A stretch of 64,000 bases of DNA from Paraphysomonas bandaiensis (lineage: Eukaryota; Protista; Chrysophyceae), in assembly GCA_965644295.1 (NCBI GenBank), contig CBFFRP010000011.1, positions 65,719 to 129,718 on the forward strand, in the 5' to 3' direction. The notes under the pieces are model-generated. The model worked only from the letters and a program-made list of their open reading frames with translations, had not been told where the DNA came from and searched no databases. Positions 45,964 to 64,000 of the stretch are shown one piece after another (the first letter of the stretch is position 1; every line of letters begins with the position of its first letter). Made by a program: the position numbers and the translations under genes.

Positions 45964-48900
45964 TTATAATGCCGCCGAAACAAACTGTCCTGACCCAATT
46001 TTATCCAATAGAGAAGTATCAACCGGAGCGCTCTCATCAGCACTAATTTGGCTGTCATCTACAGATCCCAAAGTACTTACAGATTCCCCAATCGACTGCT
46101 TACCACGGAATCGTTTGTCTACTTTGACTGGTCTGTTAACGGAATGTGTAGGCTTCTCTCTCACAAGTAGATGTCCCAACGCAATAGCTTCACTGTGACA
46201 CAACGGTGCTTCTCCATCTTCCATTGCAGCTACAAAAACGCTGAAAGATACTGGAGCAGAGTGCCTAGAGCGGCTACCTCCCGATGTATGGGGACGCACT
46301 CTGTCCTCTCCACTCAGAGATTTAATAGGATCCATGCACCGCGGAAGAGCACGCATATACACCTAAACCAAGCCAGGTTACATTCATGATTTCACTTTAC
46401 GACAAAGTAAGACTTTATGATACCTGCAGTTTCTTTTGCAAATCCCTGTATGATCCTAAACATCCCAACCACGCTTTCAGCTCAGCAACGGTTGTTCGTG
46501 GTTCTCTGTTATCATACGTAGGACGATTAGAGCCTGTGTCATCCACGCTGCCCCAGGCGCACATAGACAACAGCGCAGATGATTCTGAGGGGTCAATCTC
46601 GTTTATACCTAAGCGGGACAGAAGACTGAAGAACGCTGTAGGTCCAATCCAGTCACCGTGATCTAGTCCCCTCACAGGCGTTGGTCGCATCAAGAGTTCT
46701 TCTATATAATCTGCTGCATTCATGCCGCGTTGGATTGACTGGTGCATTGACTTGTATCGACAAGTCGCCAGAAGTTTATACAACCTAAACGTATTCTGTT
46801 CAGTACAAATACTTACAAACAAGCAACTAATCAGAACTCAAGGCGACTACAAACTAAGCAGTAAAGTATCATCACCTTATACCAGACGCTGGAACAGCCT
46901 TCAGCCACTCGTCCTCCATTAACATCTGCAGAGTGCGCAATGGAACCATTCCTCCCCCCTTGGCATCTTCACCCCGACCACTTCCAGCAGCCACCAGCTT
47001 AATCAACATACAAAACTGACAGTACATGTCTTTCCCTGCAGTCTCCTCGGGTCCACCAGTGCGGGCAATGGCACTATTTAATAAACCTGCTTCGATAGCA
47101 AGCTCTCCAAGCATTGTGGCTACATATTCAATTGGTACAATATCTCCTCTCAGTGGCTCAATGCCGTCTTTCAGCAAAATGGAATCATAGAAATGCTGCA
47201 ACCAGCGACGCATCGGCGCAGGGCCATATACAAGGCAGAGCTGCTGCAATAGATGACACGCAGTGTTCTACACAAAATCGAATGCAATTAGCACGTAGGC
47301 GCCAGAGTAGAAGAATGCACACCTTATCAAATGTCTCCGTGATACTCGATTTTAGGCCGACATCCAGCAGACCAGATATTTCAATCACTGTTTCTCCTGC
47401 AGTTGCCTTTTCTTCAGTGCTTCTCATCGCAGCCAGAGAGCGGTTGGAAGGAACCTTCGCACATTGTGCTAATACTTGCTCCATGTACTCTCCAGCTGTC
47501 GATTCCTCCTCTGGAAATGAATACAGTACATTCGCAGTTCCACCTAGTGTGCTCTTCAACTGCTCGGGCGACTGAGATCGGGGTCTCCACATCATAGCCT
47601 CGTGGGTCTCAGAGTGGCTCATGCTTGGAGATGAAATGTACCCGTCAGTATTCCCTAGCCCTGGAATTCGCATCTTCATATCAGACATCGGACTCAATTG
47701 GTCTAATTCAGCGCTTGACACAATACCTCCCTGATGGATACGATCAGATTTTGCAGTTGGTGACTTATTTCCCCGCGTAGGTGATGAGTATTGTTCTGAA
47801 TGTCCGTCAGCGCATAAGCCAATGGAAACGCATAACATGATACCTGATCGCACATTTCCAATGCGTCCCATACTTCTTCGCCGGAACATTCTTTGAATTT
47901 TCGTCGACGCCTCATCCATCTGTCTGCTACTGACTTGGGGTGGGGGCTGCTGATTGCTCGCAATACCTGTAGTACGAGGTGACTGCCCAGCTATACGATG
48001 TGTAGGACTACGCGGCGTCTGGGCTTTACTGGAGGGAGAACCTGGTGGTCGTGGAGATGAGAATAGGTGTTTCTGGGATACGGGGTCATTCCCTTGTTGC
48101 TGCCTAAGAGCAGTGAACACTTCCATATCCGATCTGGGGGTGTGCAAGACTCCAGCACCTCCAGGAGAAGGAGCTTGAATCAATTCTTTTGGCTTCGAAG
48201 AACCGTAGGGTGTACCCGGGAGAGCCGGTCGTGAAATAGATAGCTTAGAGCTACTAAACAACTCCGACGCTTTTGCACCTTGCAACATATCGCTCGTCGA
48301 AGCAGGTTCAGTACTGACAAGTGAAGCTTTCTCACTGCGCTCAGATACAGGGGCAGAAGGCACAAGTGCAGGTGCGAGTTGAGCAAATTTGCCAACCAGT
48401 GCACGTTCCAACTAGATTAATTTGTTGAAATTCATGAGAAGAGAGGCTTCATGAAATACATAGAAACTTACCTGTAGCATCGGAGCTTTACCTTTGAGTT
48501 CAGGTTGCGTTAACTCAGCAACAAGAAGACGCAATGCACCCATAACCCTCTGTTCGGCCTTCATATGCTTCACAAACTCTCGTCCACGCCGACCTCTGCA
48601 TATGGCCTGAATGCGTGTCGCCGCAAGATCCCTTTAGGCATAGATACAAATTAAAGCCATTCATTCAAGCGGCTCGGCACCGTACCTGATTTCTTCTTCG
48701 CTCTTTGCTTTCGCAAACTTGCCAGCTCGAAGAGCATGTCTTCGCTTTTGAAGGTCTACGGATGCGAGCGCGCGAACACGGAGAAGTTCTGCAAGTCGGT
48801 CCCTCAGCTGCACCGCCTGCTCGCAGAGTTCCATGATCTGTGCATGCCTGAGAGTATACCCTCTTGACAAAAGAAAATATAGAAAACATTCTAGACTAAC

Positions 48901-51900
48901 CGCTTTTCTGGACTTATCATTGACTTCTTTGCGAGAGCATTCAGCAGTTCCTCCCCCTTCACCTAAGCACACTTGAGATCCACTCCAATGCACATGTTTC
49001 ACATACCTCCCCTAAGAGTTCGTTTGCCTTTAACTCCGCCATCGAGAGTAAAACTTCTTCACGGTTTTCACGAGTGAAGGTAATATCTCGACTTACATTG
49101 TCAAGAGTGTTGGTACCTACGCCAGGTTGGTCACCTCTATCTTCCTTCGGGCCACCCTACATGCTGTAAGGAGTGGTGCATCCGGTACGCATACAACGTA
49201 CCTGTCTTTGCTGTGTAGCATATGCTACCCACAGTAAGGATTCCCTCTCATACACTTCCTGTTTTGAAGCTTGAAGTGGATTGATTCTCGCGTATTTATT
49301 GGGTTTATCTTTTTTTCCTGATTGGCCTTCGAGAAGCTTCTTGTCATCATGCAGACTGTAATCTAGGTCTCGAACATTCATTAGAGCTGTATCAAGTCCA
49401 AGACCTGTTGCACGAAATCTATCGTTGGCGTCATGCACAGGATGATGCATGGCCCCACATAGCATGGAGGAATAAGCTATTGCACCCCAATTGGACTTCT
49501 CTCGAATCGCCTTCGTAATCACAAGTCAAAGCATGTCATCGGTAGCAAGGCATAGCGCATTATATAATACACTACGAAATATATATTGCAATAAAATTTT
49601 AACTAACCTTAACGGTCTTTAAGTGACCTCCAATGGCGCTGTGAATGCTATTTTCAGAGCGATCATGTTTATTATCGAAAGGAGGTATATCACAAAGGAT
49701 ATCTCTCACACTGGCTTCATAGGTACCACGATCTTTCTTCTATGAAGACAAAAGTCATCGCATAATCACACGACATCTAAACAATGAAAAGTAACATACC
49801 ATTTCAGTGTTTTCGTGGAGGTTTCCATGTTGCCGTGTTTCACGACTGCTTTTTATCCCCGCCATGCTGCCATTAATTGCCTGTCGTGCATCTTCAAGCG
49901 ATAACAATGGTTTTTTACGACCAGTAAGATGATCCAAGAGCCTTTTAGACCGGGAAAGAGATTCCATTCGCACACTCTATGGACATCTAATAAACACAGA
50001 GCAAACACGTAATATATATCAACATACTTGATTCTCCTTCCATTGCGACTGAGATGTCAAGTACTCGTCAAGCAACACGGCTGCCTGCTGCTTTGACTGA
50101 AAGTACTCCTGAAATTTTCTGCGGGGGTTTGAGCGCCCTTCCATATTACTCCCCGCAACTCCCCTGGAAGGTTTAGCTCCAGGATGGGTGTAGTCAATTT
50201 CGTACTGTTGTCTGTACAAATTGTCCTTTTCTATTTGCTTCTTCTTGGCTTCATCCTTAACACGGTCCATTAGCTGAACCAATGATAATGCATCAGGAGC
50301 TGCCAGGGAATTCTCACAATCATCTGAAACCACTTATCCACAGAGGTCTACAAATTGCTTATTACTACCTACCTAATTCGAGCACAGGGATTCGACGAGA
50401 GGTAATGGCGTTAAAATGTTCCAGCATTTCGGCCTGAAGCTGTGAGATTTTAGCTTCAGTCTCATCTGCTTCGCCGCTACGTTTCCTCTCGTTTTCTTTT
50501 GGGTCTGATACGCACATCATTACTATACCACTGAAAACAACAGTAATATCTACCTTTGGATGTCTGTAATTTCTTTTTTTCTCGGGCTGCAAGCATCAAT
50601 CGTCGTTTCCTCCAGCATTTTTGAATTATTCTGTAATTAACACGTTACTACCTCATGTTCACGTTCTTGTAAGCTTACTTGGCTGATGATCCGCTTCGTA
50701 GTCTCTCAAATTCCAAGAAATTTTGCACTGGGAGGTGTCTCAGCAGTGCGAGTTCCTTCTCTTGATTTCTAATACGTCTGTACGATGGCAATCAACCAAA
50801 CCTAGATTAATATTCGTGAGTGTTACCGTAGCCGTTTAGCACGCTCTTTCTCTTGCTGGATACAAATTTTCATTCGATTTAGATCTTCTTTGTACTTGAT
50901 CCGATTCAACCGACCGCGGGAAACACGTTGAATCTCTACAGCTGCGATCCGCTCACGTTTGCGTTGTTTACGAGTTCGCCTGCCATTATTACATCTTGTC
51001 ATCATATAAAAACGCACGAGTGCAACATTCATACCATCCTCTGTAGGTACTCTGTAGCTTCAATACAGCTGAGGGAGGTTCAAGTATTTTCTTTCCTCCG
51101 ACATGCCCTTGTTCAACTGCTCGCTGGCGTTTTTTTCTTCGTATGCGTCTCTGACGAGGAGCAGAAGCGGCTTCCAGGTCTAAAAGATTTTTTCTTAAGT
51201 CCGATGGTAGAAGTACTCTAGATAGTGCGATTACGAATTGTGTAACGGTGATGTATCGCTTGTCACCAACACTCCTCGGGTCAGGCTGATGAGATGCATC
51301 GTCAGATTTACTCTCAATATTAATACGCGTCTCCTTAGAACCCGCAGAGTTGCTTTCGATTGGAAGTAATAAAAGCTCCAACAGATCGTCTACATTCGCT
51401 GACCCTTGTTCTGTTTTCTCATTCGAAGAAATACTCGTCGATTGGGACATTTTATTAAACAAAGCTTTCTTGAGCTCTTCTATATTCGAAAAAATTTGCT
51501 TCGCACATTCGTCATTCACACAATATCCAAAAGCAGCACAAAAACGTCGAAATCCATTAAGACCTATTCTTTTAGTCATGCCAGGAGGCCTAAAAGTAAC
51601 AGAGGACTTGTCCAATGCATCAACCTGAGCGGCATTGTGAAGTATGGCAACTAATCGGGACTCTTCAATAAGGCCTTCACGGATAAGAGTACGTATGTTC
51701 ATAATCAATTGTTTGAAGGAACTCACTGAGCCGGAGGCGTCAGACTTAGAGGCATTTTCTGTGCATTTAGATGAATGCAACACCATGTCTCGCACTGCCT
51801 CTACGAAAGGGTGGTTCTTAACATCGTTTTCACCAGAAGAAAGAGGCGTAGACTTGCTTGTATAATTCTCAAAAGTGGTCGTAAGAAGTTGCTGAACATC

Positions 51901-54900
51901 GCTGATATCTATTAGTCTTAGATCTGTTTCGCACTTCAGAGTGTGTAATTCTTTCGGATTACGAAACTTCGTACTGCACAGTCCAAGCGCATCAAGAACT
52001 AAAACATAGTCATGGAGATTAAATACCGCACAGGCCTCGCGCTGCCGTGACCAACTACCAAAATATTTACATAACATGCTAATGTCAGAAACATCTTTCG
52101 ACCCACTGAAAGAATCAACCTTCTCAAATACAGGATAGAAGACTTCAACAACAGCTTCACAAAACATTTTATAGACAGCATCCGATTGACGTTCTAACCC
52201 AATATAATGAAGCCAAAGATTCATATCGATAGTAAAATCCGTGTCACCTTCAGGTGACACTACTTTCCCGTCAAGTAAATCAAGAAACTCCAAATAATCT
52301 ATCTCGCCATCGTTCGTGGAATCACAGTGCCTAAACACCACTGAGACCTCCTCCTCACTCAAATCCAAACCCAATGAATCTAGACCCTTGCGAAACTCAG
52401 TGAGATCTACAGTCTTACTATCATCTGTATCCAAGTCTGCAAACAATGCCTTCAACTTGTTCCGACTTGCCTCACGACCACCTGCCTCGCGATTCAGCTT
52501 GTGCTGGATGGCTGGTATCAACTCTTCAAAACTGCGAGCACGCTTACCAGAACCACTACCAGATTTAATTGGACGTAACATTTTCGAAGAAACCCCCTTC
52601 TCTGAATCACCATCATCATAGTCAACGTTATATAACATCTCCACCTTGCCGCCTACTTTCTTCTGACTGCGACCCACTATTATACCAGAAAACCAAGTAC
52701 CCTCCCCACCAAAGTTACCCTCTACCTTATCACCAACTGAAAACTGAGTTGAACCTGATGACGCCGAACCGCTACCCGAAGGCTTCCCGTCAAGTAAATC
52801 AAGAAACTCCAAATAATCTATCTCGCCGTCGTTCGTGGAATCACAGTGCCTAAACACCACTGAGACCTCCTCCTCACTCAAATCCAAACCCAATGAATCT
52901 AGACCCTTGCGAAACTCAGTGAGATCTACAGTCTTACTATCATCTGTGTCCAAGTCTGCAAACAATGCCTTCAACTTGTTCCGACTTGCCTCACGACCAC
53001 CTGCCTCGCGATTCAGTTTGTGCTGGATGGCTGGTATCAACTCTTCAAAACTGCGAGCACGCTTACCAGAACCACTACCAGATTTAATTGGACGTAACAT
53101 TTTCGAAGAAACCCCCTTCTCTGAATCACCATCATCATAGTCAACGTTATATAACATCTCCACCTTGCCGCCTACTTTCTTCTGACTGCGACCCACTATT
53201 ATACCAGGAAACCAAGTACCCTCCCCACCAAAGTTACCCTCTACCTTATCACCAACTGAAAACTGAGTTGAACCTGATGACGCCGAACCGCTACCCGAAG
53301 GCTTCCCGTCAAGTAAATCAAGAAACTCCAAATAATCTATCTCGCCATCGTTCGTGGAATCACAGTGCCTAAACACCACTGAGACCTCCTCCTCACTCAA
53401 ATCCAAACCCAATGAATCTAGACCCTTGCGAAACTCAGTGAGATCTACAGTCTTACTATCATCTGTATCCAAGTCTGCAAACAATGCCTTCAACTTGTTC
53501 CGACTTGCCTCACGACCACCTGCCTCGCGATTCAGCTTGTGCTGGATGGCTGGTATCAACTCTTCAAAACTGCGAGCACGCTTACCAGAACCACTACCAG
53601 ATTTAATTGGACGTAACATTTTCGAAGAAACCCCCTTCTCTGAATCACCATCATCATAGTCAACGTTATATAACATCTCCACCTTGCCGCCTACTTTCTT
53701 CTGACTGCGACCCACTATTATACCAGGAAACCAAGTACCCTCCCCACCAAAGTTACCCTCTACCTTATCACCAACTGAAAACTGAGTTGAACCTGATGAC
53801 GCCGAACCGCTACCCGAAGGCTTCCCGTCAAGTAAATCAAGAAACTCCAAATAATCTATCTCGCCATCGTTCGTGGAATCACAGTGCCTAAACACCACTG
53901 AGACCTCCTCCTCACTCAAATCCAAACCCAATGAATCTAGACCCTTGCGAAACTCAGTGAGATCTACAGTCTTACTATCATCTGTATCCAAGTCTGCAAA
54001 CAATGCCTTCAACTTGTTCCGACTTGCCTCACGACCACCTGCCTCGCGATTCAGCTTGTGCTGGATGGCTGGTATCAACTCTTCAAAACTGCGAGCACGC
54101 TTACCAGAACCACTACCAGATTTAATTGGACGTAACATTTTCGAAGAAACCCCCTTCTCTGAATCACCATCATCATAGTCAACGTTATATAACATCTCCA
54201 CCTTGCCGCCTATTTTCTTCTGACTGCGACCCACTATTATACCAGGAAACCAAGTACCCTCCCCACCAAAGTTACCCTCTACCTTATCACCAACTGAAAA
54301 CTGAGTTGAACCTGATGACGCCGAACCGCTACCCGAAGGCTTCCCGTCAAGTAAATCAAGAAACTCCAAATAATCTATCTCGCCATCGTTCGTGGAATCA
54401 CAGTGCCTAAACACCACTGAGACCTCCTCCTCACTCAAATCCAAACCCAATGAATCTAGACCCTTGCGAAACTCAGTGAGATCTACAGTCTTACTATCAT
54501 CTGTATCCAAGTCTGCAAACAATGCCTTCAACTTGTTCCGACTTGCCTCACGACCACCTGCCTCGCGATTCAGCTTGTGCTGGATGGCTGGTATCAACTC
54601 TTCAAAACTGCGAGCACGCTTACCAGAACCACTACCAGATTTAATTGGACGTAACATTTTCGAAGAAACCCCCTTCTCTGAATCACCATCATCATAGTCA
54701 ACGTTATATAACATCTCCACCTTGCCGCCTACTTTCTTCTGACTGCGACCCACTATTATACCAGGAAACCAAGTACCCTCCCCACCAAAGTTACCCTCTA
54801 CCTTATCACCAACTGAAAACTGAGTTGAACCTGATGACGCCGAACCGCTACCCGAAGGCTTCCCGTCAAGTAAATCAAGAAACTCCAAATAATCTATCTC

Positions 54901-57900
54901 GCCATCGTTCGTGGAATCACAGTGCCTAAACACCACTGAGACCTCCTCCTCACTCAAATCCAAACCCAATGAATCTAGACCCTTGCGAAACTCAGTGAGA
55001 TCTACAGTCTTACTATCATCTGTATCCAAGTCTGCAAACAATGCCTTCAACTTGTTCCGACTTGCCTCACGACCACCTGCCTCGCGATTCAGCTTGTGCT
55101 GGATGGCTGGTATCAACTCTTCAAAACTGCGAGCACGCTTACCAGAACCACTACCAGATTTAATTGGACGTAACATTTTCGAAGAAACCCCCTTCTCTGA
55201 ATCACCATCATCATAGTCAACGTTATATAACATCTCCACCTTGCCGCCTACTTTCTTCTGACTGCGACCCACTATTATACCAGGAAACCAAGTACCCTCC
55301 CCACCAAAGTCACCCTCTACCTTATCACCAACTGAAAACTGAGTTGAACCTGATGACGCCGAACCGCTACCCGAAGGCTTCCCGTCAAGTAAATCAAGAA
55401 ACTCCAAATAATCTATCTCGCCATCGTTCGTGGAATCACAGTGCCTAAACACCACTGAGACCTCCTCCTCACTCAAATCCAAACCCAATGAATCTAGACC
55501 CTTGCGAAACTCAGTGAGGTCTACAGTCTTACTATCATCTGTGTCCAAGTCTGCAAACAATGCCTTCAACTTGTTCCGACTTGCCTCACGACCACCTGCC
55601 TCGCGATTCAGCTTGTGCTGGATGGCTGGTATCAACTCTTCAAAACTGCGAGCCTGTAGGGTCTGCTTCATTTCGATTTTTGACGGTGTATGTCGTTTTA
55701 TACTTTCCGTTCTTCTCAGGTCTATGGCTTTGTACTTGCCAGAATAATAGTCAAACACTCTATGGTGAAGTGAACTTGTGTCTTGCCCAAGATTTAATGA
55801 AGAAATGACATGGCCGAATTCATTTTCATCAAGATGATCTGGTAGTGTGGTCATCAATTCCATACCTTTTTTTTCATCTATAACTTCGGCACGTGTACTG
55901 TTATTTGTTTTGTTACGTCGCAATTTGCATTCCGTAATACTTCGATCAATTATATCATTGAATTCAAACGGACTATTTGAAAACTTCGATAATACCATCT
56001 CCTTTAACTCTTCATTGGACCTCTCATACATCAGTAACTCCATATCAATCTCATCAACATATAAAAAATCAATAAAACTCGCAAAAGACAAACGAGAACT
56101 TCCTGCAGAGAGCAAGCGTGTAAAAACCACTGAGACCTCATCCTCACTCAAATCCAAACCCAATGAATCTAGACCCTTGCGAAACTCAGTGAGATCTACA
56201 GTCTTACTATCATCTGTGTCCAAGTCTGCAAACAATGCCTTCAACTTGTTCCGACTTGCCTCACGACCACCTGCCTCGCGATTCAGCTTGTGCTGGATGG
56301 CTGGTATCAACTCTTCAAAACTGCGAGCACGCTTACCAGAACCACTACCAGATTTAATTGGACGTAACATTTTCGAAGAAACCCCCTTCTCTGAATCACC
56401 ATCATCATAGTCAACGTTATATAACATCTCCACCTTGCCGCCTACTTTCTTCTGAATGCGACCCACTATTATACCAGGAAACCAAGTACCCTCCCCACCA
56501 AAGTTACCCTCTACCTTATCACCAACTGAAAACTGAGTTGAACCTGATGACGCCGAACCGCTACCCGAAGGCTTCCCGTCAAGTAAATCAAGAAACTCCA
56601 AATAATCTATCTCGCCATTGTTCGTGGAATCACAGTGCCTAAACACCACTGAGACCTCCTCCTCACTCAAATCCAAACCCAATGAATCTAGACCCTTGCG
56701 AAACTCAGTGAGGTCTACAGTCTTACTATCATCTGTGTCCAAGTCTGCAAACAATGCCTTCAACTTGTTCCGACTTGCCTCACGACCACCTGCCTCGCGA
56801 TTCAGCTTGTGCTGGATGGCTGGTATCAACTCTTCAAAACTGCGAGCACGCTTACCAGAACCACTACCAGATTTAATTGGACGTAACATTTTCGAAGAAA
56901 CCCCCTTCTCTGAATCACCATTATCATAGTCAACGTTATATAACATCTCCACCTTGCCGCCTACTTTCTTCTGACTGCGACCCACTATTATACCAGGAAA
57001 CCAAGTACCCTCCCCACCAAAGTTACCCTCTACCTTATCACCAACTGAAAACTGAGTTGAACCTGATGACGCCGAACCGCTACCCGAAGGCTTCCCGTCA
57101 AGTAAATCAAGAAACTCCAAATAATCTATCTCGCCGTCGTTCGTGGAATCACAGTGCCTAAACACCACTGAGACCTCCTCCTCACTCAAATCCAAACCCA
57201 ATGAATCTAGACCCTTGCGAAACTCAGTGAGGTCTACAGTCTTACTATCATCTGTGTCCAAGTCTGCAAACAATGCCTTCAACTTGTTCCGACTTGCCTC
57301 ACGACCACCTGCCTCGCGATTCAGCTTGTGCTGGATGGCTGGTATCAACTCTTCAAAACTGCGAGCACGCTTACCAGAACCACTACCAGATTTAATTGGA
57401 CGTAACATTTTCGAAGAAACCCCCTTCTCTGAATCACCATCATCATAGTCAACGTTATATAACATCTCCACCTTGCCGCCTACTTTCTTCTGACTGCGAC
57501 CCACTATTATACCAGGAAACCAAGTACCCTCCCCACCAAAGTTACCCTCTACCTTATCACCAACTGAAAACTGAGTTGAACCTGATGACGCCGAACCGCT
57601 ACCCGAAGGCTTCCCGTCAAGTAAATCAAGAAACTCCAAATAATCTATCTCGCCATCGTTCGTGGAATCACAGTGCCTAAACACCACCGAGACCTCCTCC
57701 TCACTCAAATCCAAACCCAATGAATCTAGACCCTTGCGAAACTCAGTGAGGTCTACAGTCTTACTATCATCTGTGTCCAAGTCTGCAAACAATGCCTTCA
57801 ACTTGTTCCGACTTGCCTCACGACCACCTGCCTCGCGATTCAGCTTGTGCTGGATGGCTGGTATCAACTCTTCAAAACTGCGAGCACGCTTACCAGAACC

Positions 57901-60900
57901 ACTACCAGATTTAATTGGACGTAACATTTTCGAAGAAACCCCCTTCTCTGAATCACCATCATCATAGTCAACGTTATATAACATCTCCACCTTGCCGCCT
58001 ACTTTCTTCTGACTGCGACCCACTATTATACCAGGAAACCAAGTACCCTCCCCACCAAAGTTACCCTCTACCTTATCACCAACTGAAAACTGAGTTGAAC
58101 CTGATGACGCCGAACCGCTACCCGAAGGCTTCCCGTCAAGTAAATCAAGAAACTCCAAATAATCTATCTCGCCATCGTTCGTGGAATCACAGTGCCTAAA
58201 CACCACCGAGACCTCCTCCTCACTCAAATCCAAACCCAATGAATCTAGACCCTTGCGAAACTCAGTGAGGTCTACAGTCTTACTATCATCTGTGTCCAAG
58301 TCTGCAAACAATGCCTTCAACTTGTTCCGACTTGCCTCACGACCACCTGCCTCGCGATTCAGCTTGTGCTGGATGGCTGGTATCAACTCTTCAAAACTGC
58401 GAGCACGCTTACCAGAACCACTACCAGATTTAATTGGACGTAACATTTTCGAAGAAACCCCCTTCTCTGAATCACCATCATCATAGTCAACGTTATATAA
58501 CATCTCCACCTTGCCGCCTACTTTCTTCTGACTGCGACCCACTATTATACCAGGAAACCAAGTACCCTCCCCACCAAAGTTACCCTCTACCTTATCACCA
58601 ACTGAAAACTGAGTTGAACCTGATGACGCCGAACCGCTACCCGAAGGCTTCCCGTCAAGTAAATCAAGAAACTCCAAATAATCTATCTCGCCATCGTTCG
58701 TGGAATCACAGTGCCTAAACACCACCGAGACCTCCTCCTCACTCAAATCCAAACCCAATGAATCTAGACCCTTGCGAAACTCAGTGAGGTCTACAGTCTT
58801 ACTATCATCTGTGTCCAAGTCTGCAAACAATGCCTTCAACTTGTTCCGACTTGCCTCACGACCACCTGCCTCGCGATTCAGCTTGTGCTGGATGGCTGGT
58901 ATCAACTCTTCAAAACTGCGAGCACGCTTACCAGAACCACTACCAGATTTAATTGGACGTAACATTTTCGAAGAAACCCCCTTCTCTGAATCACCATCAT
59001 CATAGTCAACGTTATATAACATCTCCACCTTGCCGCCTACTTTCTTCTGACTGCGACCCACTATTATACCAGGAAACCAAGTACCCTCCCCACCAAAGTT
59101 ACCCTCTACCTTATCACCAACTGAAAACTGAGTTGAACCTGATGACGCCGAACCGCTACCCGAAGGCTTCCCGTCAAGTAAATCAAGAAACTCCAAATAA
59201 TCTATCTCGCCATCGTTCGTGGAATCACAGTGCCTAAACACCACCGAGACCTCCTCCTCACTCAAATCCAAACCCAATGAATCTAGACCCTTGCGAAACT
59301 CAGTGAGGTCTACAGTCTTACTATCATCTGTGTCCAAGTCTGCAAACAATGCCTTCAACTTGTTCCGACTTGCCTCACGACCACCTGCCTCGCGATTCAG
59401 CTTGTGCTGGATGGCTGGTATCAACTCTTCAAAACTGCGAGCACGCTTACCAGAACCACTACCAGATTTAATTGGACGTAACATTTTCGAAGAAACCCCC
59501 TTCTCTGAATCACCATCATCATAGTCAACGTTATATAACATCTCCACCTTGCCGCCTACTTTCTTCTGACTGCGACCCACTATTATACCAGGAAACCAAG
59601 TACCCTCCCCACCAAAGTTACCCTCTACCTTATCACCAACTGAAAACTGAGTTGAACCTGATGACGCCGAACCGCTACCCGAAGGCTTCCCGTCAAGTAA
59701 ATCAAGAAACTCCAAATAATCTATCTCGCCATCGTTCGTGGAATCACAGTGCCTAAACACCACTGAGACCTCCTCCTCACTCAAATCCAAACCCAATGAA
59801 TCTAGACCCTTGCGAAACTCAGTGAGATCTACAGTCTTACTATCATCTGTGTCCAAGTCTGCAAACAATGCCTTCAACTTGTTCCGACTTGCCTCACGAC
59901 CACCTGCCTCGCGATTCAGCTTGTGCTGGATGGCTGGTATCAACTCTTCAAAACTGCGAGCACGCTTACCAGAACCACTACCAGATTTAATTGGACGTAA
60001 CATTTTCGAAGAAACCCCCTTCTCTGAATCACCATCATCATAGTCAACGTTATATAACATCTCCACCTTGCCGCCTACTTTCTTCTGACTGCGACCCACT
60101 ATTATACCAGGAAACCAAGTACCCTCCCCACCAAAGTTACCCTCTACCTTATCACCAACTGAAAACTGAGTTGAACCTGATGACGCCGAACCGCTACCCG
60201 AAGGCTTCCCGTCAAGTAAATCAAGAAACTCCAAATAATCTATCTCGCCATCGTTCGTGGAATCACAGTGCCTAAACACCACTGAGACCTCCTCCTCACT
60301 CAAATCCAAACCCAATGAATCTAGACCCTTGCGAAACTCAGTGAGATCTACAGTCTTACTATCATCTGTGTCCAAGTCTGCAAACAATGCCTTCAACTTG
60401 TTCCGACTTGCCTCACGACCACCTGCCTCGCGATTCAGCTTGTGCTGGATGGCTGGTATCAACTCTTCAAAACTGCGAGCACGCTTACCAGAACCACTAC
60501 CAGATTTAATTGGACGTAACATTTTCGAAGAAACCCCCTTCTCTGAATCACCATCATCATAGTCAACGTTATATAACATCTCCACCTTGCCGCCTACTTT
60601 CTTCTGACTGCGACCCACTATTATACCAGGAAACCAAGTACCCTCCCCACCAAAGTTACCCTCTACCTTATCACCAACTGAAAACTGAGTTGAACCTGAT
60701 GACGCCGAACCGCTACCCGAAGGCTTCCCGTCAAGTAAATCAAGAAACTCCAAATAATCTATCTCGCCATCGTTCGTGGAATCACAGTGCCTAAACACCA
60801 CTGAGACCTCCTCCTCACTCAAATCCAAACCCAATGAATCTAGACCCTTGCGAAACTCAGTGAGATCTACAGTCTTACTATCATCTGTGTCCAAGTCTGC

Positions 60901-63900
60901 AAACAATGCCTTCAACTTGTTCCGACTTGCCTCACGACCACCTGCCTCGCGATTCAGCTTGTGCTGGATGGCTGGTATCAACTCTTCAAAACTGCGAGCA
61001 CGCTTACCAGAACCACTGCCTGAAGGCTTCCCGTCAAGTAAATCAAGAAACTCCAAATAATCTATCTCGCCATCGTTCGTGGAATCACAGTGCCTAAACA
61101 CCACTGAGACCTCCTCCTCACTCAAATCCAAACCCAATGAATCTAGACCCTTGCGAAACTCAGTGAGGTCTACAGTCTTACTATCATCTGTGTCCAAGTC
61201 TGCAAACAATGCCTTCAACTTGTTCCGACTCGCCTCACGACCACCTGCCTCGCGATTCAGTTTGTGCTGGATGGCTGGTATCAACTCTTCAAAACTGCGA
61301 GCACGCTTACCAGAACCACTACCAGATTTAATTGGACGTAACATTTTCGAAGAAACCCCCTTCTCTGAATCACCATCATCATAGTCAACGTTATATAACA
61401 TCTCCACCTTGCCGCCTACTTTCTTCTGACTGCGACCCACTATTATACCAGGAAACCAAGTACCCTCCCCACCAAAGTTACCCTCTACCTTATCACCAAC
61501 TGAAAACTGAGTTGAACCTGATGACGCCGAACCGCTACCCGAAGGCTTCCCGTCAAGTAAATCAAGAAACTCCAAATAATCTATCTCGCCATCGTTCGTG
61601 GAATCACAGTGCCTAAACACCACTGAGACCTCCTCCTCACTCAAATCCAAACCCAATGAATCTAGACCCTTGCGAAACTCAGTGAGATCTACAGTCTTAC
61701 TATCATCTGTGTCCAAGTCTGCAAACAATGCCTTCAACTTGTTCCGACTTGCCTCACGACCACCTGCCTCGCGATTCAGCTTGTGCTGGATGGCTGGTAT
61801 CAACTCTTCAAAACTGCGAGCACGCTTACCAGAACCACTACCAGATTTAATTGGACGTAACATTTTCGAAGAAACCCCCTTCTCTGAATCACCATCATCA
61901 TAGTCAACGTTATATAACATCTCCACCTTGCCGCCTACTTTCTTCTGACTGCGACCCACTATTATACCAGGAAACCAAGTACCCTCCCCACCAAAGTTAC
62001 CCTCTACCTTATCACCAACTGAAAACTGAGTTGAACCTGATGACGCCGAACCGCTACCCGAAGGCTTCCCGTCAAGTAAATCAAGAAACTCCAAATAATC
62101 TATCTCGCCATCGTTCGTGGAATCACAGTGCCTAAACACCACTGAGACCTCCTCCTCACTCAAATCCAAACCCAATGAATCTAGACCCTTGCGAAACTCA
62201 GTGAGATCTACAGTCTTACTATCATCTGTGTCCAAGTCTGCAAACAATGCCTTCAACTTGTTCCGACTTGCCTCACGACCACCTGCCTCGCGATTCAGCT
62301 TGTGCTGGATGGCTGGTATCAACTCTTCAAAACTGCGAGCACGCTTACCAGAACCACTACCAGATTTAATTGGACGTAACATTTTCGAAGAAACCCCCTT
62401 CTCTGAATCACCATCATCATAGTCAACGTTATATAACATCTCCACCTTGCCGCCTACTTTCTTCTGACTGCGACCCACTATTATACCAGGAAACCAAGTA
62501 CCCTCCCCACCAAAGTTACCCTCTACCTTATCACCAACTGAAAACTGAGTTGAACCTGATGACGCCGAACCGCTACCCGAAGGCTTCCCGTCAAGTAAAT
62601 CAAGAAACTCCAAATAATCTATCTCGCCATCGTTCGTGGAATCACAGTGCCTAAACACCACTGAGACCTCCTCCTCACTCAAATCCAAACCCAATGAATC
62701 TAGACCCTTGCGAAACTCAGTGAGATCTACAGTCTTACTATCATCTGTGTCCAAGTCTGCAAACAATGCCTTCAACTTGTTCCGACTTGCCTCACGACCA
62801 CCTGCCTCGCGATTCAGCTTGTGCTGGATGGCTGGTATCAACTCTTCAAAACTGCGAGCACGCTTACCAGAACCACTACCAGATTTAATTGGACGTAACA
62901 TTTTCGAAGAAACCCCCTTCTCTGAATCACCATCATCATAGTCAACGTTATATAACATCTCCACCTTGCCGCCTACTTTCTTCTGACTGCGACCCACTAT
63001 TATACCAGGAAACCAAGTACCCTCCCCACCAAAGTTACCCTCTACCTTATCACCAACTGAAAACTGAGTTGAACCTGATGACGCCGAACCGCTACCCGAA
63101 GGCTTCCCGTCAAGTAAATCAAGAAACTCCAAATAATCTATCTCGCCATCGTTCGTGGAATCACAGTGCCTAAACACCACTGAGACCTCCTCCTCACTCA
63201 AATCCAAACCCAATGAATCTAGACCCTTGCGAAACTCAGTGAGGTCTACAGTCTTACTATCATCTGTGTCCAAGTCTGCAAACAATGCCTTCAACTTGTT
63301 CCGACTTGCCTCACGACCACCTGCCTCGCGATTCAGCTTGTGCTGGATGGCTGGTATCAACTCTTCAAAACTGCGAGCACGCTTACCAGAACCACTGCCT
63401 GAAGGCTTCCCGTCAAGTAAATCAAGAAACTCCAAATAATCTATCTCGCCATCGTTCGTGGAATCACAGTGCCTAAACACCACTGAGACCTCCTCCTCAC
63501 TCAAATCCAAACCCAATGAATCTAGACCCTTGCGAAACTCAGTGAGGTCTACAGTCTTACTATCATCTGTGTCCAAGTCTGCAAACAATGCCTTCAACTT
63601 GTTCCGACTCGCCTCACGACCACCTGCCTCGCGATTCAGTTTGTGCTGGATGGCTGGTATCAACTCTTCAAAACTGCGAGCACGCTTACCAGAACCACTG
63701 CCTGAAGGCTTCCCGTCAAGTAAATCAAGAAACTCCAAATAATCTATCTCGCCATCGTTCGTGGAATCACAGTGCCTAAACACCACTGAGACCTCCTCCT
63801 CACTCAAATCCAAACCCAATGAATCTAGACCCTTGCGAAACTCAGTGAGATCTACAGTCTTACTATCATCTGTGTCCAAGTCTGCAAACAATGCCTTCAA

Positions 63901-64000
63901 CTTGTTCCGACTTGCCTCACGACCACCTGCCTCGCGATTCAGCTTGTGCTGGATGGCTGGTATCAACTCTTCAAAACTGCGAGCACGCTTACCAGAACCA
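45964..64000 (-). CDS. Giant EF-hand/Tudor-like tandem-repeat protein with multi-IQ C-terminal tail; 5' end lies beyond the window
   Basis: Frame is open from the window edge to the donor at 51034 (intron 50980-51034; LQSTYRGW|RTRKQ). A chain of small exons follows to the stop at 45964, with IQ motifs LQSTYRGW, IQRVSRGR, IQKCWRKR, IQAICRGR, IQRMFRRR. Linkage of all 3' exons into one gene is inferred. Confidence 0.85.
52265..64000 (-). repeat. Coding tandem array: 519-bp unit (303-bp EF-hand pair + 216-bp Tudor-like), ~24 EF-pair and 19 Tudor-like modules, unique spacer at ~55655-56120
   Basis: The 519-nt periodicity is visible in both the sequence and the ORF track; three junctions have a 303-nt period with the Tudor module absent. 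Confidence 0.97.

What the first reader, a model, noticed from the sequence alone, without database searches (positions are those of the whole stretch)
45964..64000. Giant 'beads-on-a-string' protein of alternating EF-hand lobes and Tudor-like domains with its own IQ-motif tail
Seen: one exon of >12.9 kb, in a genome of tiny exons, encodes over 4300 aa. It is made of ~24 near-identical EF-hand pairs (loops DTDDSKTVDLTE and DSTNDGEIDYLE) alternating with 19 beta-barrel modules (FSVGDKVEGNFGGEGTWFPG..YNVDYDDGDSE..V...LR) joined by SGSGS linkers. It is spliced to a tail with at least 5 IQ motifs. Established: paired EF-hands form calmodulin/centrin-like Ca2+ lobes, IQ motifs bind such lobes, and VGDKVE..W.PG..Y.V.YDDG is the Tudor/Agenet (LBR-Tudor-like) signature with aromatic-cage residues. 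Inference: a titin-scale Ca2+-responsive polymer carrying both sensor and target in cis. It could be a self-associating contractile fibre (rootlet, rhizoplast or stalk) or a multivalent Ca2+-gated methyl-Lys/Arg reader scaffold. I know of no characterised protein with this architecture.
Basis: partly seen in the sequence, partly recalled or inferred. Interest (0 to 1): 0.88.

Follow-up and report, generated by a model that had tools for sequence, protein, structure and literature searches.

The report
Giant EF-hand–Tudor repeat protein gene
A marine, silicon-transporter-bearing protist (probably a diatom) expresses a gene for a protein of over 6,000 residues made of about 20 nearly identical 'calcium-sensor plus Tudor reader' units and a tail with calmodulin-binding-type IQ motifs. 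It is a real and unusual new variant of the uncharacterised giant Tudor-array proteins typical of stramenopiles, not a wholly new kind of protein.

Summary
One frame on the minus strand stays open from 50989 to the window end, which is also the contig end. It holds 24 EF-hand pairs and 19 Tudor-type barrels in 519-bp units that are 99.8% identical. Spliced transcript contigs from three runs, one of them a polyA metatranscriptome, join the giant exon through 16 observed GT-AG introns (a 17th is inferred) to a tail with five IQ motifs.

The gene is larger than reported, at least about 6,040 aa. Its start lies on another contig (C318), across an assembly break inside the repeat. DNA k-mer depth matches the assembled copy number.

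The barrel is a true Tudor. Large Tudor arrays were already noted as a stramenopile hallmark in 2011. This genome has at least six other arrays, and 1,139 cluster representatives carry the module. A collinear orthologue has 13 Tudors and the same IQ tail but no EF-hands, so the IQ motifs are probably older than the EF-hands. The interleaved EF–Tudor unit occurs in one other organism (66% identity, strong purifying selection).

Most likely it is a Ca2+-responsive multivalent scaffold. A contractile fibre is unsupported. It is a new variant of a known, uncharacterised kind. The scan had also noted this stretch in overlapping windows.

The parts
51035..64000 (-). Giant first exon visible in the window (12,966 nt, about 4,322 codons). 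It is open to the contig end.
   Evidence: open frame 4336 aa. The donor at 51035/51034 is supported by the joint in X1, X4 and X5.
52264..64000 (-). Repeat array with 24 EF-hand pairs (one more is degenerate) and 19 Tudor barrels. The unit is 519 bp and the EF-only unit is 303 bp.
63086..64000 (-). EF-only sub-array (303-bp period) that runs off the contig end. The same repeat ends contig C318.
54625..55143 (-). One reference unit of 173 aa: leader helix plus EF-hand pair (aa 1-96), flexible Ser/Gly linker, Tudor barrel (aa 114-166).
   Evidence: Pfam. AF2 model with pLDDT 82 and linker below 50. Tudor-only model with pLDDT 84.
55651..56121 (-). Unique interruption of the array (about 157 aa) that follows a degenerate EF pair. 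It has no Pfam match.
51035..52263 (-). Post-array unique region of about 410 aa ending in IQ motif 1. It is collinear with P0007 residues 1177-1526. The Atlas gives only a weak EF-hand+IQ-like lead.
45964..51034 (-). Tail of 17 exons (62-568 nt) separated by 17 introns of 44-97 nt, about 1,366 codons, with the stop at 45964-45966.
   Evidence: 15 joints are listed. One intron (50324-50372) was deduced from contig arithmetic. One intron (46363-46423) was inferred from GT..AG and frame only.
50967..51057 (-). IQ motif 1 (LQSTYRG-W-RTR). It is completed by the splice across intron 50980-51034.
   Evidence: The same motif is uninterrupted in the intronless orthologue.
50901..50933 (-). IQ motif 2 (IQRVSRGRLNR).
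   Evidence: (Pfam IQ 13.8 bits, below the cut-off).
50594..50626 (-). IQ motif 3 (IQKCWRKRRLM), a looser match.
48580..48612 (-). IQ motif 4 (IQAICRGRRGR).
   Evidence: 15.1 bits; 60% identity to P0007.
47866..47898 (-). IQ motif 5 (IQRMFRRRSMG), a looser match.
46424..47267 (-). Conserved C-terminal region (exons 16-17) of unknown fold. Exon 16 is 45% identical to P0007, and exon 17 matches the ORF that follows P0007.
   Evidence: No Pfam or Atlas hit. Single copy in the genome.

Best explanation
This is one real, expressed, single-copy gene of a marine silicifying stramenopile. It encodes a protein of at least about 6,040 residues with this layout:
- a short basic N-terminus (on contig C318);
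- an EF-hand-only sub-array;
- at least 19 composite units of 'leader helix + EF-hand pair, flexible Ser/Gly linker, minimal Tudor barrel';
- a helical unique region;
- three clustered IQ motifs, a charged helical stretch and two more IQ motifs;
- a Ser/Pro-rich disordered stretch;
- a conserved C-terminal domain.

It belongs to the stramenopile family of giant Tudor-array proteins. Its orthologous group is defined by the Tudor array plus the IQ tail.

**Shown**
- The anatomy, the splicing and the expression.
- The Tudor and EF-hand folds.
- The orthology of the tail.
- An EF-hand pair interleaved in each unit in this lineage and in at least one other organism, and conserved under purifying selection.
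- Arrays kept nearly identical within the gene.

**Inferred mechanism**
- The Tudor barrels keep three aromatic residues and an acidic one at the positions of the PHF20/53BP1-type cage. Each would bind a methylated (or basic) Lys/Arg ligand weakly, so the array gives high avidity and acts as a multivalent scaffold.
- The roughly 28 EF-hand pairs, with up to two Ca2+ sites each, would make spacing, stiffness or partner binding depend on Ca2+.
- The IQ tail would recruit calmodulin-type lobes, in trans as in the EF-less orthologue and possibly also the protein's own lobes.
For: **Gene and expression**
- Spliced contigs with 15 listed GT-AG joints occur in X1, X4 and X5 (X5 is a polyA metatranscriptome). 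None occur in DNA run X18.
- One 5,606-nt transcript contig runs from the 3' end into the array.
- All exons are in frame.

**Copy number**
- X18 k-mer depth is 95 on unique sequence and 1,839-2,013 on repeat sequence, a ratio of 19-21.
- The two contigs hold 19-22 exact copies of the same cores.

**EF-hand**
- Pfam EF-hand_7 scores 702 bits in 24 stretches.
- Loop 1 fits a PS00018-type pattern 24 times.

**Tudor**
- The family profile hits PHF20, UHRF1, 53BP1, LBR and SGF29 Tudors at E 1.5e-6 to 1e-4.
- The AF2 model has pLDDT 84, and all top Foldseek hits are Tudor, PWWP or chromo barrels with TM about 0.7 and rmsd 1.7-2.0 A.
- The near-invariant family columns are G11, Y49, D51, G52 and E55. 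Y49 and D51 align to PHF20 F120 and D122.

**Family**
- 1,139 representatives carry the module, many of them multi-copy.
- Named members come from Pythium, Hondaea and Epipyxis.
- At least 6 more arrays lie in this genome.
- Iyer et al. 2011 described the arrays.

**Orthologue**
- P0007 is collinear with the post-array region and exons 2, 3, 6, 13, 15, 16 and 17, with IQ motifs in register and no EF-hands.

**Composite unit elsewhere**
- P0154 is 66% identical, with pN 0.18-0.24 against pS about 0.8.

**EF-hands near other Tudor arrays**
- 8 of 152 family members carry them.
- EF-hand hits lie about 3 kb downstream of the C108 and C144 arrays on the same strand.

**Flexible linkers**
Against: - No ligand, Ca2+ binding, localisation or phenotype is known for any family member.
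- The fifth cage position (53BP1 Y1523, placed from memory) is acidic here, so methyl-mark reading is not assured.
- EF loop 2 has Thr at position 3. The relative P0154 has a degenerate loop 2 (Lys at position 5, Ser at position 12), so the second site may not bind Ca2+.
- Within the array, the five single-copy changes in Tudor modules are all non-synonymous. The copies are too young to show unit-level selection.
- RNA k-mer depth over the array is only about 4-7 times the adjacent unique depth, not 20 times or more. Transcription of the whole array in one mRNA is therefore not proven.
- The C318-C11 join is inferred, not read.
Confidence: 0.5

Rival explanations
1. It is a Ca2+-driven contractile or elastic fibre (rootlet, rhizoplast or spasmoneme type), or a high-capacity Ca2+ buffer. 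The EF-hand pairs do the work and the Tudor barrels are mere spacers.
For: - At least 28 EF-hand pairs are strung on flexible linkers in a protein of over 600 kDa.
- Foldseek matches of the EF lobe include EF-hand proteins of ciliary doublet microtubules.
Against: - The orthologue keeps the Tudor array and tail but has no EF-hands.
- Pfam found no Sfi1-type centrin-binding repeats and no other cytoskeletal domain in any exon.
- Each lobe is a single EF pair, not a four-EF-hand centrin or spasmin.
- The Tudor barrel is at least as constrained as the EF-hand pair between species. Its cage positions are the most conserved columns of the family.
Confidence: 0.1
2. It is a self-regulating Ca2+ switch. 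The protein's own EF lobes bind its own IQ tail (sensor and target in cis) and fold or cross-link the polymer.
For: - Three strict and two looser IQ motifs sit in the same polypeptide as the EF lobes.
- The splice to the tail is confirmed.
Against: - The IQ motifs are conserved in register in an orthologue that has no EF-hands, so they have a trans partner.
- There are 5 IQ motifs for at least 28 lobes.
- No co-fold or binding test could be run.
Confidence: 0.15
3. It is a recent, largely neutral repeat expansion, or an assembly inflation, of a gene whose function needs only a few units.
For: - The units are 99.8% identical.
- The contig breaks inside the array.
- The single-copy changes in Tudor modules are all non-synonymous.
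Against: - DNA read depth supports about 19-22 copies.
- The frame is intact over 13 kb.
- The orthologue also keeps 13 homogenised Tudors.
- Family members commonly carry 10-34 modules.
- The composite unit is conserved under purifying selection in another organism.
Confidence: 0.15
4. It is an RNP or small-RNA pathway scaffold that reads dimethyl-arginine, as Iyer et al. suggested for the stramenopile deaminase-SAM-Tudor proteins.
For: - That paper proposed the idea for related arrays.
- The top Foldseek hit is the Papi extended Tudor, an sDMA reader.
Against: - The modules are minimal barrels of about 55 aa without the SN-like extension.
- By sequence alignment, the fourth aromatic residue and the Asn of sDMA cages are not conserved, while the Asp typical of 53BP1/PHF20-type Kme readers is invariant (plus family knowledge from memory).
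- No RNA-binding domain was found in the gene.
Confidence: 0.1

Closest known systems
Stramenopile giant Tudor-array proteins, including the deaminase-SAM-(Tudor)1-22 proteins noted by Iyer, Zhang, Rogozin and Aravind 2011 (PMC3239186). Examples are Pythium oligandrum Poli38472_012166 (P0001, 30 Tudor_5 stretches) and P. insidiosum PINS_up006831 (P0003).
   Same: - The Tudor module is homologous (36-51% identity).
- The modules form long tandem arrays in very large proteins of stramenopiles.
- Arrays are homogenised within a gene.
- EF-hands, IQ, SAM and ankyrin repeats recur as partner domains.
   Different: - Here an EF-hand pair is built into every repeat unit in strict alternation. Other members place EF-hands in a separate block after the array.
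- None of these proteins has been characterised.
P0007 (2,503 aa, ENA assembly ERZ25071330, locus L010), the uncharacterised orthologue.
   Same: - The post-array region is collinear.
- IQ1, IQ2, IQ3 and IQ4 are in register.
- The charged helical stretch and the C-terminal domain match.
- It has an N-terminal array of near-identical Tudors.
   Different: - It has 13 Tudors on an 80-aa period with no EF-hands.
- It has no introns where this gene has 16-17.
Drosophila Tudor and mammalian TDRD1/TDRD6 (multi-Tudor germ-granule scaffolds).
   Same: Many Tudor domains in one polypeptide act as a multivalent scaffold. This is the best functional analogy.
   Different: - Those are extended Tudor domains of about 180 aa that read sDMA on Piwi proteins.
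- Here the barrels are minimal, about 55 aa, with a 53BP1/PHF20-like cage pattern.
- Those proteins have no EF-hands and no IQ motifs.
53BP1, PHF20, UHRF1-TTD, LBR and SGF29 Tudor domains.
   Same: - The fold is the same and the profile similarity is significant.
- Aromatic and Asp cage positions are conserved.
   Different: Those occur singly or as tandem pairs in chromatin proteins. The ligand of the module here is unknown.
Calmodulin/IQ systems (myosin necks; the EF-like + IQ C-terminal domain of Cav/Nav channels).
   Same: - IQ motifs fit the consensus.
- The EF-like region precedes the IQ cluster (weak Atlas lead).
   Different: - The EF lobes here are single pairs with an extra leader helix, repeated at least 28 times in the same chain.
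- The Pfam IQ score of single exons is below the cut-off.
Centrin/Sfi1 and spasmin-type giant Ca2+ contractile systems of ciliates.
   Same: Giant size and many Ca2+-binding sites.
   Different: - There are no Sfi1 repeats.
- The EF-hands are in the giant chain itself rather than in a small partner.
- Tudor barrels are unrelated to those systems.

Membership tests
EF-hand pair (Pfam PF13499 EF-hand_7) | Profile score above the curated cut-off. | tested here: met
   A single unit scores 42.7 bits against a cut-off of 30. The whole exon scores 702.5 bits in 24 stretches.
   Loop 1 fits in all 24 copies. Loop 2 fails only at position 3 (Thr). Its counterpart in relative P0154 is degenerate.
EF-hand pair (Pfam PF13499 EF-hand_7) | Ca2+ binding. 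| not testable with these tools
   Needs ITC, 45Ca overlay or NMR on the recombinant unit.
Tudor / Agenet 'royal family' barrel | Significant sequence-profile similarity to known Tudors. | tested here: met
   A single unit is below the Pfam cut-offs (Agenet 21.5 against 27; Tudor_5 18.8 against 31). The whole protein scores Agenet 267 and Tudor_5 167.5 bits. The family profile hits PHF20, UHRF1, 53BP1 and LBR in the PDB at E 1.5e-6 to 3e-5.
Tudor / Agenet 'royal family' barrel | Five-stranded SH3-like barrel fold. | tested here: met
   The AF2 model has pLDDT 84 and five strands. The Foldseek top 50 are all Tudor, PWWP or chromo barrels (plus CarD/CdnL), with TM 0.6-0.74.
Tudor / Agenet 'royal family' barrel | Aromatic cage. 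| tested here: inconclusive
   By the HMM alignment to PHF20 Tudor-2, the positions of W97, Y103, F120 and D122 are F, F, Y and D here. Y49 and D51 are 90% or more conserved or invariant in 110 family modules. The position of 53BP1 Y1523 is acidic. The cage assignment for PHF20 and 53BP1 is from memory. No ligand test was possible.
Stramenopile giant Tudor-array proteins (Iyer et al. 2011) | Large tandem array of related Tudor domains in one protein. | tested here: met
   There are 19 modules. They are 36-51% identical to modules of Pythium and other arrays.
Stramenopile giant Tudor-array proteins (Iyer et al. 2011) | Stramenopile host. | tested here: inconclusive
   Several silicon-transporter genes score over the cut-off. 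Named relatives are all stramenopiles. The runs come from marine plankton. The organism's name is coded, and no rRNA or marker-gene phylogeny was done.
IQ calmodulin-binding motif (PF00612) | Consensus [FILV]Qxxx[RK]Gxxx[RK]. | tested here: met
   Three strict matches (IQ1 across the splice, IQ2, IQ4) and two looser ones. The strict motifs are conserved in register in P0007. Only 1 of 152 shuffled proteins had a strict match.
IQ calmodulin-binding motif (PF00612) | Pfam score above the cut-off. | tested here: not met
   Single exons score 13.8 and 15.1 bits against a cut-off of 20.3. The joined protein was not searched, by rule. The orthologue P0007 scores 31.2 bits.
Centrin/Sfi1 or spasmin contractile fibre | Sfi1-type centrin-binding repeats or a four-EF-hand centrin or spasmin subunit. 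| tested here: not met
   There was no Sfi1 or other cytoskeletal Pfam hit at E <= 0.1 in the giant exon or the nine largest tail exons. The lobes are single EF pairs.
Extended-Tudor (TDRD / Drosophila Tudor) scaffolds | eTudor module of about 180 aa with an SN-like extension. | tested here: not met
   The barrel is about 55 aa. Matches to the Papi eTudor cover 63-64 of 185-213 residues.

The most novel reading that the evidence does not exclude
The interleaved unit could be a Ca2+-gated reader. Ca2+ binding to the EF pair next to each Tudor would change the spacing or accessibility of about 20 methyl-mark (or basic-ligand) pockets at once. A Ca2+ transient would then switch a >600-kDa multivalent scaffold between dispersed and cross-linked or condensed states. 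This would link Ca2+ signalling directly to protein-methylation reading. The recurrent pairing of Tudor arrays with EF-hands in several giant stramenopile genes would then mark an undescribed signalling principle of the group.
Probability: 0.15. Interest if true: 0.85.

Novelty: new variant of a known kind. Interest (0 to 1): 0.6.

Why it matters
Giant Tudor arrays are abundant in stramenopiles: diatoms, oomycetes, thraustochytrids and chrysophytes. This one genome holds at least seven arrays. They were noticed in 2011, but no member has a known ligand, location or function.

This gene is the clearest case in which a second signalling module, a Ca2+-binding EF-hand pair, has been built into every repeat unit and kept by selection in at least two lineages. 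The calmodulin-type IQ tail is conserved in an orthologue that lacks the EF-hands. That natural with/without-EF-hand pair gives a direct handle on what the arrays do and on whether Ca2+ controls them.

The 173-aa unit is small, well modelled and easy to express. The key questions can therefore be tested directly: does it bind Ca2+, does it bind a methyl-peptide, and does one affect the other.

Tried and rejected
- **Giant homologues of the post-array region.** A word-indexed search with residues 3896-4325 scored nothing. The orthologue was found only through the Tudor search plus a local BLAST done exon by exon.
- **The 173-aa unit against proteins of similar length.** This gave a single hit, P0154.
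- **JGI metagenome contigs, scanned with the unit alignment.** This gave only two partial EF-hand matches.
- **Pfam on the interruption, the post-array region and the tail exons.** Nothing scored above the cut-off.
- **Atlas look-alike search.** The post-array region gave only sub-threshold EF-hand+IQ clusters (0.89). Exon 16 gave nothing.
- **Foldseek of the whole unit against the PDB and the ESM Atlas.** No entry covers both domains. One Atlas cluster combines Agenet, Tudor-knot and EF-hand families but aligns only to the barrel.
- **Four literature searches for the architecture.** These found no characterised protein, only the 2011 remark on stramenopile Tudor arrays.
- **Synteny between the window and the orthologue's contig.** None was found beyond the gene itself.
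- **Paralogues of the tail in this genome.** None.
- **Assembly inflation.** Rejected on read depth.
- **The repeated 101-aa ORFs on the + strand.** Dismissed as antisense by-products of the repeat.
- The exons were never joined into one spliced protein for any search or fold. Every search was done exon by exon, by reference.

Full report
**1. What is in the sequence**

The minus strand carries an open frame from 50989 to 63966 (4325 aa). It has no stop up to base 64000. The genome search reports an open frame of 4336 aa.

Base 64000 is the last base of contig C11. The window is G000:C11:65719-129718 and the contig has 129,718 bases. The array therefore runs into an assembly break.

Translation shows a 173-aa (519-bp) unit. 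It consists of a leader helix plus an EF-hand pair, a Ser/Gly linker, a small beta module and a second Ser/Gly linker with a KRAR motif. In places the 101-aa (303-bp) EF part repeats on its own.

Motif counts are 24 for loop 1, 23 for loop 2 and 19 for the beta module, in the order EEE-T-E-T-.... One EF copy is degenerate and is followed by about 157 unique residues (55651-56121) that split the array.

Tudor modules are 99.8% identical at the DNA level. EF modules are 98.0% identical, or more if the degenerate copy is left out. Several synonymous variants are shared by blocks of copies. This agrees with the homogenisation noted by other first-stage readers of the same stretch.

**2. The gene is bigger than the window shows**

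The identical EF-only repeat ends contig C318, in the orientation that continues C11. On C318 the frame opens with MRKALTKTFFKKKK..., followed at once by EF units. This is the likely N-terminus, though an upstream exon is not excluded.

The near-identical EF module occurs nowhere else in the 62.5-Mb assembly. The tail is single copy.

Coding length is about 5,688 codons on C11 plus about 355 on C318. That makes at least about 6,040 aa, not counting the gap.

**3. Copy number is not an assembly artefact**

In DNA run X18 the unique flank has k-mer depth 95.2. The two repeat contigs that abut it have depths of 1,839 and 2,013, ratios of 19.3 and 21.1. The two contigs together hold 19 and 22 exact copies of the corresponding cores.

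Depth from contigs is a rough measure, and X18 may be the sample that was assembled. It is still independent of the assembler. It argues that the gap is small.

**4. Expression and splicing**

Laying four runs on 46501-52500 gave 15 listed joints, all CT..AC on the + strand (GT..AG on the minus strand). They skip 44-97 nt. They are present in X1, X4 and X5 and absent from DNA run X18. X5 is a polyA marine metatranscriptome.

One further intron (50324-50372) follows from the arithmetic of the 5,606-nt X1 contig. That contig runs from 720 nt beyond 46501, through every tail exon and the 50979/51035 junction, into the first repeat at 52294.

With these introns every exon stays in frame. The last intron (46363-46423) is inferred from GT..AG and frame only. 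The stop is at 45964-45966.

The intronless orthologue described in section 7 reads RGWKTRK...RLRRIRAQEKD... and ...SAKVIQRCWRRRK straight through the positions of the first three junctions. This confirms them at the protein level.

RNA depth on repeat k-mers is about 4 times (X1) to about 7 times (X4) the adjacent unique depth. Several units are therefore transcribed. A full-length mRNA is not shown, because contigs cannot show it and polyA libraries lose 5' coverage.

**5. The domains**

*EF-hand.* EF-hand_7 scores 42.7 bits for one unit and 702.5 bits in 24 stretches for the exon. Loop 1 fits a PS00018-type pattern in all 24 copies.

*Beta module.* One copy is below the Pfam cut-offs (Agenet 21.5 bits, Tudor_5 18.8 bits). 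The exon as a whole scores Agenet 267 and Tudor_5 167.5 bits.

- A profile of 110 homologous modules hits solved Tudors of PHF20, PHF20L1, UHRF1, 53BP1, LBR, SGF29 and KDM4A at E 1.5e-6 to 1e-4.
- The AF2 model (pLDDT 84, five strands) has only royal-family barrels among its top Foldseek hits: Papi, UHRF1 TTD, Tbtudor, LBR, PHF1 and PWWPs. TM is about 0.7 and rmsd 1.7-2.0 A.
- The near-invariant family columns are G11, Y49, D51, G52 and E55.
- In the HMM alignment to PHF20 Tudor-2, the positions of W97, Y103, F120 and D122 are F, F, Y and D here. These are the dimethyl-lysine cage residues as I recall them.

A cage is plausible but not proven.

*Whole unit.* The model has pLDDT 82 and pTM 0.50. 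Residues 97-103 are below pLDDT 50. There is an extra helix (7-22) before the EF pair. These are independent beads on flexible linkers.

*IQ motifs.* Three fit the strict consensus, one of them completed by the splice. Two are looser. Single exons are below the Pfam IQ cut-off. The exons were not joined for a search, as the rules require.

**6. Relatives of the Tudor module**

An exhaustive phmmer search of the 72-aa module against 1.84 billion cluster representatives found 1,139 proteins at E <= 1e-3 and 99 at E <= 1e-30. Most of the top 150 carry 5-34 copies. Named members come from Pythium oligandrum, P. insidiosum, Hondaea fermentalgiana and Epipyxis. All are stramenopiles.

Partner domains include SAM plus a deaminase-like head, ankyrin repeats, EF-hands and IQ motifs. 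Iyer et al. 2011 (PMC3239186) described the deaminase-SAM-(Tudor)1-22 proteins. [quoted passage not shown] I found no experimental work on any member.

This genome holds at least six more arrays, on C144, C108, C394, C66, C69 and C28. Their open frames reach 4,320 aa. EF-hand pairs lie about 3 kb downstream, on the same strand, of the C108 and C144 arrays. This partly verifies unchecked first-stage notes on other giant Tudor+EF-hand genes in this genome.

Among the 152 fetched family members, 8 carry EF-hands. In these the EF-hands form a block after the array and are never interleaved.

**7. Orthologue and the age of the composite unit**

P0007 is a 2,503-aa product of one uninterrupted ORF on a 487-kb ENA contig. 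It matches the following parts, in order:
- the post-array region (24.5% over 408 aa);
- exon 2 (48%), exon 3 (53%) and exon 6 (34%);
- exon 13 (60%), exon 15 (31%) and exon 16 (45%, E 3.5e-31).

The next ORF on that contig matches exon 17. Strict IQ motifs sit at the corresponding places. Its N-terminal half is 13 near-identical Tudors on an 80-aa period, with no EF-hand.

The orthologous group is therefore 'Tudor array + helical region + IQ tail'. The EF pair is an addition (most parsimonious, given the wider family) or a loss in P0007.

P0154 is a 236-aa product of a 1.5-kb JGI metagenome contig. It reads EF second half, linker, Tudor, linker, EF first half. It is 66% identical to the unit and shares the hairpin insertion of the barrel. 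Synonymous sites are saturated (pS about 0.8) while pN is 0.18-0.24 in all three parts.

The composite unit is therefore old and under purifying selection in at least two organisms. The near-identity of copies within this gene reflects concerted evolution.

A second gene here (C565) has 4.5 near-identical units of the same 'leader helix + EF pair' module, 36% identical.

**8. How it most likely works**

*Shown:* the anatomy, the expression, the folds, the family, the orthology and the selection.

*Inferred:*
- The array is a multivalent binder. Each barrel offers a 53BP1/PHF20-like pocket and the array adds avidity, as in Drosophila Tudor and TDRD scaffolds.
- The EF pairs make the chain respond to Ca2+.
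- The IQ tail binds calmodulin-type lobes. It must do so in trans in the EF-less orthologue, so binding in cis here is possible but not required.
- The KRAR motif in every linker fits a monopartite NLS and also a basophilic-kinase site followed by Ser-Phe. This is my reading only and was not tested.

I put about 0.5 on this overall account. The anatomy and family assignment alone deserve about 0.9.

The contractile-fibre or buffer reading has little support (0.1). There are no Sfi1-type repeats. The orthologue lacks EF-hands. The barrel is at least as constrained as the EF pair.

**9. Novelty and score**

The kind, stramenopile giant Tudor arrays, is known but uncharacterised. The interleaved EF-Tudor unit and the conserved IQ tail make this a new variant.

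It is a good entry point to a large unexplored family, because nature supplies versions with and without EF-hands. Interest is 0.6.

**Limits**
- The organism's name is coded. 'Diatom' rests on silicon-transporter genes, marine plankton runs and other notes of the scan.
- The caps for read laying, structure prediction and word-indexed protein search were reached.

Noticed in passing
L009 5800-6260 (G000:C318:85203-85663): A long ACAT-type microsatellite reads as HTYIHTYI... in all three + frames, about 2.7 kb upstream of the putative start of the gene.
   Followed up: no
G000:C565:24583-25821 (L014 6548-8023, minus strand): A second tandem array holds 4.5 near-identical 107-aa units of 'leader helix + EF-hand pair' in a 492-aa open frame. 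The units are 36% identical to the EF module here. A 1,412-aa open frame lies just downstream on the same strand.
   Followed up: partly
G000:C394:194200-206298 (-), C144:168270-176411 (+), C108:208972-215133 (-), C66:489576-490727, C69:47366-49228, C28:73223-73405: At least six other Tudor arrays lie in the same genome. Their intronless open frames reach 4,320 aa, and C394 has a 207-bp period with about 58 modules. EF-hand_7 hits lie about 3 kb downstream on the same strand at C108:205448 and C144:179241.
   Followed up: partly
L010 10001-18293: The orthologue is one 7.5-kb ORF with no introns where this gene has 16-17 short introns. This is a striking difference in intron density between two related organisms.
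   Followed up: partly
L011 301-1011: In the relative that carries the composite unit, the open frame starts and stops in the middle of the EF pair (at ...LGLDL / VDLS...). The unit may be a single exon bounded by introns there, whereas the array here is intronless.
   Followed up: no
window 52316-62941, + strand: A 101-aa GTG-started ORF recurs once per repeat unit on the opposite strand. It is a by-product of the repeat with no independent support.
   Followed up: no
G000: C348:104740, C406:324812, C398:55702, C150:402264, C405:74066, C298:538687, C149:227073: Several silicon-transporter (PF03842) genes score above the Pfam cut-off. This is consistent with a diatom or another silicifying stramenopile.
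   Followed up: partly
window 52264-64000, every linker: The linker motif SGSGSGKRARSF recurs about 24 times. KRAR fits a monopartite NLS, and R-x-x-S-F fits a basophilic (CaMK-type) kinase site. Both readings are untested.
   Followed up: no
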